Below are positions 11,115 to 12,715 of a stretch of DNA of 64,000 bases, piece after piece. This DNA comes from Hypanus sabinus (Eukaryota). The translations under genes were made by a program, and so were the position numbers. The first letter of the stretch is position 1; every line of letters begins with the position of its first letter. Below the pieces are notes generated by a model that searched no databases, was not told where the DNA came from, and saw only the letters and a program-made list of their open reading frames with translations. The stretch lies in contig NC_082726.1 in NCBI RefSeq assembly GCF_030144855.1, positions 61,318,001 through 61,382,000 on the forward strand, given 5' to 3'.

Positions 11115-12496
11115 TAGCCGTACACCATGAGGAGTTGATCATGATGCATCCACCTCTACCTCTGGTTTTGAGAGACTAGACTGATCTATCTTGACGATGA
11201 ATTGTGAACCCGTCTATTACTAATCACTGTGTCTGGCACGGAAGGAGTTAACCAAGATTCCATAAAACAATGACATGTCTGAGTTTCTTGTTGTGACATG
11301 AATTCAGTTTGCTAGTTGGATCATTTGTTTCCCAGGCAGTAAGTTTTCTACACTTAGTATCCCCAGTGGAGTCTAGTCCAATTACTGAATGGCCTGAATC
11401 CTATTACTTAAATGCTCACAGGGAACACAGCAGTAACATTGATCTATTGCTTCCAGGATTGCTAATTAACACCTCTGCACATGCTGTGACATGGTGGATT
11501 TCAATAATAGGATTTCTTGTGGTCTCCAAGTATAAGACCATCAGACCATAAGATATGGGAGCAGAGTTAGGCCATTTGGCCCATTGAGTCTGGTCTGTTA
11601 TTCGATCATGGCTGATTTATTCCTCTCAACCTCATTCTCCTGCCTTCTTCTCGTAACTTTTGATCAAGGGAGTTCTATTGACTTTAAAGCTGGAAAATAT
11701 GGATCCTTGTGACTTTGAGCCCATTGAGGCACGCAGAATTCCAAACCACAACAAGGTTGTGGTCCTCTTGGAGGGGATGATCCATACTGTGTTGATACAA
11801 GTCATGGTATTTAGTTAGGGAGATGCATTTACCCAAGAATTTATTACTTGTTCATGAACTGTGGTAATGGATTGGATTTAGAAACAGAAACTGCCCACCA
11901 AAACTGCAGCGAGATGCACTGGGATTACAAATGGTTCATCACCTCTCTCCACACCCCCAGCATCACCCTTAACTTACATCCCACATCCTCCATTGGTAAG
12001 TGCAAAGGTGAAAGTTCTTGCAGTCTTTGAGGACAGCTTTCATCTATTTACAGTCAAACTGTCGAAGTTGTATAAGACATTGCTGAGGCCTAATTTGGAG
12101 TATTGTGTGCAGTTTTGGTCACCTACTTACAGGAAAGATGTGTGAGGAGATGTAAAGTTGATCTAACAAGCATAAAGGCAGAAAGCCCCACTTCAAGCTC
12201 ATTGAGGTAAAAGTCAAATGCCTCAAATATTTAAATTAACATTTAATTGTATGTGCATATGTGTTTTATTGTGTCTTTCACTGTAAACAGAAAATGGACC
12301 AAGTTGAATTATCAAACTGTTGCTGCTAACTTGATTACTAAACGTGGTTTATGATTCTAATAGTCTACCAGACTGCCCACATCATGAAAGGATTAATAAC
12401 TGGATGTTATACCATCGCACAAACTGATCTCAGAGAGCAAGTTTGATCGTGCACTTAGATCAGCATCACTGAAATCTAATGTTTTAACATTTGCAG

Positions 12497-12715
12497 ATTA
12501 AATCCAGGTTAAACTCTTATATTTTGGGCCTAAGGAACCATCCATGGAGAATATTTAGAATCTGCGTGAGCACGATCAGTCTCATCATTTCTGTAACAGT
12601 ACTCGTCTCTGCTCTGATGTTCTGGAAAACTGCGAAATTGTCTCAAGTGCACCCAAGCAGCAAGATCCGAAAAATTGTCAAGAGGCCAGCACAGACAAAA
12701 GTGCCCAGCCAGTGA
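12497..12715 (+). CDS. CDHR1: Putative alternative terminal exon of CDHR1: second transmembrane segment plus short basic tail
   Basis: Branch-like CTAAT (12476-12480), acceptor ttttaacatttgcAG, phase 0 compatible with the donor at 8387. Encodes [64 protein letters not shown]..., which aligns with the canonical TM exon (DNPMKAL...[30 protein letters not shown]). Confidence 0.65.
   Translation: [72 protein letters not shown]

What the first reader, a model, noticed from the sequence alone, without database searches (positions are those of the whole stretch)
12476..12715. Hidden paralogous transmembrane exon in CDHR1: possible alternative membrane anchor/tail switch
Seen: between the last ectodomain exon (donor 8387, phase 0) and the canonical TM exon (15305) there is a non-repeat segment with a branch-like CTAAT, a phase-0 TTTGCAG acceptor and a 72-codon frame. 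It encodes a ~22-aa hydrophobic stretch ([22 protein letters not shown]) followed by basic residues. It aligns in register with the canonical exon: NHP/[55 protein letters not shown]. Similarity is clear in protein but weak in DNA, which fits an old exon duplication kept under selection. Established: the related cadherin PCDH15 uses alternative cytoplasmic tails (CD1-3). Inference: this species may make two CDHR1 isoforms with the same ectodomain, one lacking the Pro-rich, PTVSGS and SELKQ tail motifs, possibly cell-type specific. I do not know whether this exon has been described before.
Basis: partly seen in the sequence, partly recalled or inferred. Interest (0 to 1): 0.82.

Follow-up and report, generated by a model that had tools for sequence, protein, structure and literature searches.

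The report
Conserved alternative membrane-anchor exon of CDHR1
The stingray photoreceptor-cadherin gene CDHR1 carries, in its last intron, an intact second membrane-anchor exon that is over 500 million years old and annotated as an alternative short-tail isoform in many other vertebrates, but is missing from this species' annotation and from the papers I could search.

Summary
Window 12497-12715 (+) is a 72-codon open frame behind a TTTGCAG acceptor. It encodes a stalk, a 22-residue hydrophobic helix and a basic tail.

- **Paralogy.** It is the only open segment in the window that resembles the canonical terminal exon at 15305-15868 (alignment score 93; all 1625 others score 39 or less).
- **Species and annotation.** The window is Hypanus sabinus CDHR1, which has only one annotated product.
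- **Orthologues.** The same exon type lies between exon 16 and the canonical last exon in skate, whale shark, sawfish, two teleosts and sea lamprey.
- **Existing annotation elsewhere.** Isoforms of about 750 residues read ...DITEE|IK(S/E)R.... They are annotated in sharks, an electric ray, birds, a python, frogs, bowfin, gar, a minnow and three lampreys.
- **Age.** A tree splits alt-type from canonical-type exons with 100/100 support. Lampreys sit on both sides, so the duplication predates the lamprey/jawed-vertebrate split.
- **Selection.** dN/dS is 0.12 against skate and 0.29 against whale shark.
- **One broken copy.** The sawfish copy carries three 1-nt indels.

Not shown: expression in this species, 3'-end formation, and function. 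No paper describing the isoform was found. Verdict: a real, ancient alternative terminal exon and an annotation gap here, not a new kind of thing.

The parts
8132..8386 (+). CDHR1 exon 16 equivalent (end of the last cadherin repeat, ...VVRIDITEE). The donor GT is at 8387, phase 0. Both terminal exons would share this donor.
   Evidence: Translation. The AG acceptor is at 8130-8131. The annotated Hypanus sabinus protein P0095 reads ...VKVE|AKDED...DITEE|TFGKG. The human exon 16/17 layout is given in PMC5539332.
12386..12496 (+). Conserved intronic block upstream of the alternative exon. It holds branch-point candidates (CTAAT at 12476-12480; TTTTAAC nearer the acceptor), a weak purine-interrupted pyrimidine tract and the AG acceptor at 12495-12496.
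   Evidence: Apart from the exon-17 acceptor region, this is the only part of intron 16 alignable between Hypanus and whale shark. The last ~25 nt before the AG are nearly invariant in four elasmobranchs.
12497..12559 (+). Alternative terminal exon, part 1: a 21-residue extracellular juxtamembrane stalk ([17 protein letters not shown]...). It replaces the canonical TFGKGH...DNPMKAL stalk.
   Evidence: The motif I(K/R)(S/E)R..(S/T)Y.L(G/S)L...PW is conserved from lamprey to birds.
12560..12625 (+). Alternative terminal exon, part 2: a 22-residue predicted transmembrane helix. Its inner half (..T..IS...(F/Y)W) is shared with the canonical helix. Its outer half lacks the canonical G..AG motif and is Ser/Thr/Cys-rich.
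   Evidence: Hydropathy maximum 2.42 over 19 residues. Alignment of 17 alt-type and 15 canonical sequences.
12626..12715 (+). Alternative terminal exon, part 3: a 29-residue basic cytoplasmic tail (K.AK.S..HP..KIRKI(V/I)(K/R)RP motif, a paralogue of canonical [16 protein letters not shown]) and the TGA stop at 12713-12715. The Pro-rich, PTVSGS and SELKQ motifs are absent.
   Evidence: The in-exon stop lies at or near the same place in whale shark and skate. The TGA column is shared by four elasmobranchs.
12716..12767 (+). Moderately conserved sequence just after the stop, presumably 3'UTR or a processing region. No strong donor lies at the exon end, and no AATAAA or ATTAAA occurs before 14201.
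   Evidence: The Hypanus-skate block runs to 12767. Donor and poly(A)-signal scan. The AATAAA at 14331 aligns with an AATAAA in sawfish, which makes it a candidate only.
15305..15868 (+). Canonical terminal exon 17 equivalent: stalk, transmembrane helix and a 140-residue cytoplasmic domain ending ...[20 protein letters not shown], then the stop. It is the paralogue of the alternative exon.
   Evidence: It is identical to the C-terminus of the annotated H. sabinus CDHR1, P0095.

Best explanation
Window 12497-12715 is the Hypanus sabinus orthologue of an ancient alternative last coding exon of CDHR1.

Shown:
- A tandem duplication of the terminal (transmembrane) exon happened before lampreys and jawed vertebrates diverged.
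- Both copies have since been kept in the order exon 16, alternative exon, canonical exon.
- Both copies are under purifying selection.

Inferred from isoform models in other species:
- The exon-16 donor at 8387 can pair with the weak, conserved acceptor at 12496 instead of the strong one at 15304.
- The product would have the same six-cadherin ectodomain (about 742 residues in this species).
- It would have a different extracellular stalk, a different outer half of the membrane helix, and only a 29-residue basic tail.
- That tail keeps the juxtamembrane K/R...HP...KIRKI(I/V)KRP motif but lacks the whole distal cytoplasmic domain.

Speculative: the short-tail form anchors the ectodomain without the tail-borne interactions. 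It may also differ in juxtamembrane cleavage or lateral association.
For: **Paralogy.** Score 93 against 39 or less for every other open segment; shuffles reach 61 at most.

**Species and gene.** Exon 17 is identical to H. sabinus CDHR1, P0095. LRIT-like genes lie downstream.

**Orthologous position.** The exon lies between exon 16 and the canonical exon in:
- sawfish L003;
- skate L004 and whale shark L005;
- two teleost contigs, L001 and L002;
- sea lamprey L006.

**Conserved boundary.** Ten independent genomic ORF calls start to resemble the exon exactly at ..(F/L)Q|(I/V)K.R, that is, at the AG. The acceptor region is nearly invariant in four elasmobranchs.

**Annotated spliced isoforms reading ...DITEE|IK(S/E)R...**
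- Stegostoma, Narcine, Cetorhinus, Zonotrichia (a cluster of 44 sequences), Liasis, Amia, Pimephales and frogs.
- More frogs and Lepisosteus.
- Three lampreys.

**Tree.** Alt-type and canonical-type exons are separated with 100/100 support, and lampreys occur in both groups.

**Selection.**
- dN/dS is 0.12 for Hypanus-skate (dS 0.55), 0.29 for Hypanus-whale shark and 0.29 for skate-whale shark.
- Between the two paralogues, third positions are saturated while second positions are 57% identical.
- The alt exon is about as conserved across vertebrates as the canonical transmembrane part.
- It is an island of conservation in the intron in the ray-shark comparison.
Against: - No transcript evidence for this species could be examined, and its annotation lists a single CDHR1 product.
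- The closest relative with DNA available, the sawfish, has three 1-nt indels and an early stop in this exon. The exon can therefore be lost in batoids. Between Hypanus and sawfish the exon is no better conserved than its flanks.
- The acceptor's pyrimidine tract is weak. The exon end has no good donor, and there is no canonical poly(A) signal for 1.5 kb.
- In skate and one teleost there is no such signal at all before the canonical exon. How the transcript ends is therefore unknown.
- I could not inspect the evidence behind the isoform models of other species.
- No alt-type isoform from a mammal turned up, but the search was limited by shared words.
Confidence: 0.85

Rival explanations
1. Relic pseudo-exon in this lineage. 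The exon was functional in ancestors and is still used in sharks, skates and other vertebrates. In the stingray/sawfish branch it is no longer spliced in, and the Hypanus copy is open only because too little time has passed.
For: The sawfish copy has three frameshifting indels. There is no annotated isoform in Hypanus. Exon and flanks are about equally similar between Hypanus and sawfish. Derived amino-acid changes are about as many in Hypanus as in sawfish by my reading of the sequences.
Against: Hypanus keeps the acceptor, all 72 codons and the stop. Hypanus-skate dN/dS is 0.12 with dS 0.55, and this path includes the whole Hypanus branch. All Hypanus-specific replacements are conservative (Ile/Leu/Val/Met, Gln/His). 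By my rough estimate, not a computed test, neutral decay since the split from sawfish would leave an intact frame in only about 1 case in 10.
Confidence: 0.09
2. Regulatory 'poison' exon. Inclusion serves mainly to end translation early or to trigger mRNA decay, lowering CDHR1 output, and the peptide itself is unimportant.
For: The exon carries an in-frame stop upstream of the canonical last exon. In several species it has no poly(A) signal of its own. Transcripts could therefore run on into exon 17.
Against: A stop-carrying exon needs no conserved peptide. Here the stalk motif, the helix and the basic tail motif are conserved from lamprey to birds, with dN/dS of 0.12-0.29. In lamprey the exon lies 8.7 kb before the canonical one.
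Confidence: 0.04
3. Chance resemblance of an intronic open frame containing a hydrophobic stretch.
For: Any two single-pass anchors followed by basic residues align to some degree. tblastn itself missed the pair.
Against: The score is 93 against a maximum of 61 in 5000 block-preserving shuffles and 39 for all other open segments. Orthologues exist in six other genomes and in many annotated isoforms.
Confidence: 0.01

Closest known systems
CDHR1 'isoform X2'-type models of about 750 residues in RefSeq and other annotations. Examples: Stegostoma tigrinum X2, Narcine bancroftii X4, Cetorhinus maximus X2, Zonotrichia albicollis X2, Xenopus laevis X2, Lepisosteus oculatus X3, Petromyzon marinus X2.
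   Same: Same gene and same position (the last intron). Same phase-0 junction ...DITEE|IK(S/E)R. Same stalk motif, helix and basic tail motif, with an in-exon stop. The window peptide is 79% identical to Narcine, 86% to skate and 73% to whale shark over about 65 residues.
   Different: It is not annotated in Hypanus sabinus. The last few residues differ (KVPSQ here, KVAD in sharks and Narcine, an earlier stop in skate). None of these models appears to have been studied in the papers I could search.
Canonical CDHR1 (prCAD/PCDH21) terminal exon, equivalent to human exon 17
   Same: It is the paralogue. Shared features are phase-0 entry after ...DITEE, a Pro in the stalk, the helix half ..T(V/I).IS..M(F/Y)W, and the juxtamembrane basic motif ending ..RRII(K/R)RRP.
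   Different: Only 17-38% identical within a species. The canonical exon has a G..AG motif in the outer helix half and about 140 residues of cytoplasmic domain (Pro-rich, PTVSGS, SELKQ), all absent from the alternative exon.
PCDH15 alternative cytoplasmic domains CD1, CD2 and CD3 (from my own knowledge)
   Same: A photoreceptor and hair-cell cadherin-related protein whose isoforms share the ectodomain and differ at the C-terminus through alternative 3' exons.
   Different: As I recall it, the PCDH15 CD isoforms share one transmembrane segment and differ in long tails that are not paralogous. Here the stalk and helix are swapped along with the tail, and the two exons are ancient duplicates. This is an analogy, not membership.
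Tandemly duplicated, mutually exclusive exons (general class)
   Same: Two adjacent homologous exons with the same entry phase, one used per transcript, arising from exon duplication.
   Different: Both are last coding exons with their own stops and very different lengths (72 and 187 codons). The event is better described as an alternative last-exon choice between paralogues than as a classical internal mutually exclusive pair.

Membership tests
CDHR1 alternative short-tail terminal exon (the 'X2-type' isoform exon) | Lies in the last intron, between the exon ending ...DITEE and the canonical transmembrane/tail exon, on the same strand | tested here: met
   Window: 8386 < 12497-12715 < 15305. 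The same order holds in L001-L006.
CDHR1 alternative short-tail terminal exon (the 'X2-type' isoform exon) | Phase-0 AG acceptor immediately before I(K/R)(S/E)R | tested here: met
   TTTGCAG|ATTAAATCC. The boundary is conserved in four elasmobranchs and in ten teleost-type ORF calls.
CDHR1 alternative short-tail terminal exon (the 'X2-type' isoform exon) | The peptide groups with alt-type rather than canonical-type exons | tested here: met
   The ALT/CAN split has 100/100 support. The window sequence sits with Narcine and skate alt exons. Scores against annotated alt isoforms are 189-285, against 76-109 for the canonical exon peptide scored against the same proteins.
CDHR1 alternative short-tail terminal exon (the 'X2-type' isoform exon) | Intact frame with a hydrophobic helix, a basic tail motif and an in-exon stop | tested here: met
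   72 codons plus TGA. Hydropathy maximum 2.42. Motifs as.
CDHR1 alternative short-tail terminal exon (the 'X2-type' isoform exon) | Actually spliced to exon 16 in transcripts of this species | not testable with these tools
   No RNA data for H. sabinus were reachable. A short-ORF search with the peptide found nothing. The junction is seen only in other species' protein models.
Classical mutually exclusive exon pair | Homologous neighbouring internal exons of (nearly) equal length that keep the downstream frame | tested here: not met
   The exons are homologous neighbours. However, both end in their own stop codons and are 72 and 187 codons long. No good donor lies at the alt exon end.
Decayed pseudo-exon | Frameshifts or stops, loss of splice signals, or dN/dS near 1 | tested here: not met
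   None of these applies to the Hypanus copy. They do apply to the sawfish copy, which has three 1-nt indels.

The most novel reading that the evidence does not exclude
All vertebrate lineages sampled here, from lampreys to birds, keep a second CDHR1 form with its own stalk, its own outer helix half and a minimal basic tail. This form has escaped experimental study. It may do a distinct job, for example a tether that is cleaved or associates differently during photoreceptor disc formation, or the form used outside photoreceptors. Lineage-specific losses would exist (sawfish shown here as a broken copy; mammals possibly).
Probability: 0.4. Interest if true: 0.55.

Novelty: new member of a known kind. 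Interest (0 to 1): 0.4.

Why it matters
CDHR1 is a disease gene for cone-rod dystrophy and a key player in photoreceptor outer-segment assembly. The papers I could search treat it as one protein with one transmembrane and one cytoplasmic domain (for example PMC13090022).

This work shows three things:
- A second anchor exon has been kept under selection since before the lamprey/jawed-vertebrate split.
- It is present and intact in the stingray, although unannotated there.
- It keeps the juxtamembrane basic motif while dropping the rest of the tail.

That gives a natural dissection of which tail parts are needed where. It is directly testable in zebrafish, Xenopus or chick, where the isoform is already modelled.

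For the genome itself, this is a concrete annotation fix. As a discovery it is modest, because automated pipelines have already found the exon in many species.

Tried and rejected
- **Word-indexed search with the 72-residue peptide.** It found no hits. The length window excludes full-length proteins, and the genomic ORF has no early Met.
- **tblastn and blastn between the two exons and their flanks.** Nothing was found. The pair is too diverged for BLAST seeding, so Smith-Waterman with shuffles was used instead.
- **Spliced transcript fragments (exon 16 joined to the alt exon) among assembled public runs.** The alt-type hits of the profile search were all genomic ORF calls with intron read-through upstream.
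- **DNA for Stegostoma X2 (not on record), Mobula and Carcharodon (files too large).**
- **Search for the alt exon's own poly(A) signal or donor.** The result was inconsistent across species, so I could not decide between these options:
  - a separate terminal exon;
  - read-through to the canonical poly(A) site;
  - splicing on with exon 17 as UTR.
- **Literature.** Seven searches and four papers read found no description of the isoform. The only hit for the human variant-2 accession was a variant table.
- **LINE overlap.** I tested whether the LINE fragment ending at 12142 runs into the exon. It does not.
- **Earlier notes of this scan.** Nothing relevant was found.

Full report
**1. What is in the sequence**

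Exon 16 of CDHR1 (8132-8386) ends ...VVRIDITEE. Its phase-0 donor is at 8387. The canonical last exon runs 15305-15868. It encodes a stalk, a transmembrane helix and a 140-residue tail ending ...[20 protein letters not shown].

This matches the human layout, where exon 16 ends at c.2040 and the helix starts at Gly703 in the last exon (PMC5539332). The exon 16 and exon 17 peptides match the annotated Hypanus sabinus CDHR1 (P0095, 857 residues). Exon 17 is identical, and the protein reads DITEE|TFGKG across the junction. LRIT-like genes on the minus strand downstream fit the expected neighbourhood.

In the intron, TTTGCAG ends at 12496. A 72-codon frame and a TGA follow it. The frame holds:
- a 21-residue stalk;
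- a 22-residue hydrophobic stretch (hydropathy maximum 2.42; the canonical helix reaches 2.86);
- a 29-residue Lys/Arg-rich tail.

The segment lies in an 850-nt non-repeat island between TE copies.

**2. Is the resemblance real?**

Yes. The local alignment score to the canonical exon peptide is 93. Controls were:
- plain shuffles: mean 25, maximum 56;
- 5000 shuffles that keep the hydrophobic block together: maximum 61;
- the other 1625 open segments of 25 or more codons in all six frames: 39 or less.

At the DNA level nothing aligns. Identity by codon position is 0.39/0.57/0.28. Synonymous sites are saturated (pS 0.94) and pN is 0.48. This is the signature of two old coding paralogues.

**3. 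Relatives elsewhere**

A profile of both exons was searched against 1.84 billion representative proteins. It returned canonical CDHR1 tails plus ten short ORF calls from assembled sequencing runs. Those ten match the alternative peptide far better than the canonical one. In all ten, similarity begins exactly at ..(F/L)Q|(I/V)K.R, which is the AG.

Two of their contigs come from teleosts; their best matches are to Caranx and Centroberyx proteins. Both contigs carry exon 15, exon 16, the alt exon and the canonical exon in that order.

The clusters around lamprey CDHR1 hold RefSeq isoforms of 768-769 residues. These read ...LRLDITEE|IKERVLTYVLGLKHRPW..., followed by a helix and ..YWRSVKRSRVHP...

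A search with the whale-shark ectodomain listed isoforms of about 708-755 residues with the same junction in Stegostoma, Narcine, Cetorhinus, Zonotrichia (a cluster of 44 sequences), Liasis, Amia, Pimephales, Rhinophrynus and Xenopus. A search seeded on the bird alt exon added more frogs, Xenopus tropicalis and gar.

No Hypanus isoform of this kind is listed, and no mammal appeared. The mammal result is not conclusive, because that search needs shared five-residue words.

**4. Orthology and selection**

| Species (locus) | Alt exon position | State |
|---|---|---|
| Skate (L004) | 23137-23334 | intact, 65 codons |
| Whale shark (L005) | 32149-32364 | intact, 71 codons, ends KVAD* as in annotated shark isoforms |
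| Sea lamprey (L006) | 25509-25793 | present; exon 16 at 24223-24477, canonical exon at 34501-35181 |
| Sawfish (L003) | starts 36474 | three 1-nt indels, early stop |

- **dN/dS.** Values are 0.12 for Hypanus-skate (dS 0.55), 0.29 for Hypanus-whale shark and 0.29 for skate-whale shark.
- **Intron conservation.** Between Hypanus and whale shark only two parts of the intron align: the alt exon with about 110 nt upstream, and the last 58 nt before exon 17. The 25 nt before the AG are almost invariant in four elasmobranchs.
- **Conservation level.** Across vertebrates the alt exon is about as conserved as the canonical transmembrane part, for example 86 vs 80% for Hypanus-skate and 56 vs 64% for Hypanus-Amia.
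- **Tree.** A maximum-likelihood tree of 17 alt-type and 15 canonical peptides puts the two types on either side of one branch with 100/100 support. Lampreys and jawed vertebrates occur in both.

The duplication is therefore older than the lamprey/jawed-vertebrate split.

**5. A caution from the sawfish**

Pristis pectinata is the closest relative with DNA available. The three 1-nt indels sit in short homopolymer runs and lead to an early stop. Its remaining substitutions are conservative. The canonical exons of the same assembly are intact, so the indels are probably real, though I cannot exclude assembly error.

Between Hypanus and sawfish the exon is no better conserved than its flanks. The exon may thus be lost in some batoids. 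This keeps a small probability that the Hypanus copy is a recent relic. The low dN/dS against skate and the intact frame, acceptor and stop argue against that.

**6. How it most likely works**

*Shown:* two paralogous last coding exons share one upstream donor.

*Inferred from other species' isoform models:* using the weak upstream acceptor gives a protein of about 742 residues. It would have the same ectodomain, a different stalk, a helix whose outer half lacks the canonical G..AG motif, and a short tail. That tail keeps only the juxtamembrane basic motif. This motif is common to both paralogues and so is probably the core functional element of the tail.

*Unresolved:* 3'-end formation.
- The exon end has no good donor.
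- There is no AATAAA or ATTAAA for 1.5 kb in Hypanus.
- There is none at all before exon 17 in skate or in one teleost.
- An AATAAA at 14331 aligns with one in sawfish.

Read-through to the canonical poly(A) site, a non-canonical signal, or further splicing all remain possible.

*Speculative:* the swapped stalk could change the juxtamembrane shedding reported for this protein (Rattner et al. 2004, from my own knowledge and as cited in PMC13090022).

**7. Comparison with what is known, and verdict**

The exon belongs to an exon family already modelled by annotation pipelines in many vertebrates. It meets every membership feature that could be tested (position, phase, boundary, clade, intact frame). 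Expression in this species could not be tested.

It is not a classical internal mutually exclusive pair, because both exons carry their own stops. The PCDH15 CD1-3 case is an analogy only. I found no paper that describes the isoform.

The finding is an annotation gap in the stingray plus a well-supported evolutionary statement, not a new kind of feature.

Noticed in passing
window 11026-11114 (+): An 88-nt copy, 95% identical, of the very end of exon 17 (15809-15895: the last ~19 codons plus 27 nt of 3'UTR). It reads [19 protein letters not shown], and two of its three coding differences are synonymous. It sits in intron 16, about 1.4 kb upstream of the alternative exon, and its flanks are unrelated. 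It lies beside a minus-strand LINE reverse-transcriptase fragment (10174-10995, Pfam RVT_1), inside a ~1.8 kb stretch that has no counterpart in the sawfish intron. This suggests a recent lineage-specific insertion or repair patch. The origin is unexplained.
   Followed up: partly
L003 (Pristis pectinata) 36474-36690: The sawfish orthologue of the alternative exon carries three 1-nt indels in short homopolymer runs, with an early stop in the entry frame. Its substitutions are otherwise conservative. This is either a real lineage-specific loss or assembly error.
   Followed up: partly
window 31014-36593 (-) and 40672-52569 (-): Two LRR + Ig + fibronectin-III + transmembrane genes (LRIT-like) lie downstream of CDHR1 on the opposite strand. 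The same arrangement occurs on the teleost contig L001. As I recall it, this is the CDHR1-LRIT2-LRIT1 neighbourhood of other vertebrates.
   Followed up: no
window 11897-12142 (+), 13130-13798 (-), 20334-20834, 26879-27616, 45437-46036: Several fragments of one LINE family (the reverse-transcriptase C-terminal region with the ..LVRPNLEYC.QFWS motif). Two of them bracket the non-repeat island that holds the alternative exon.
   Followed up: partly
window 8530-8645: A 15-nt tandem repeat (six or so copies of ..CTCTGACATACCTRC..) lies just inside intron 16, after the exon 16 donor.
   Followed up: no
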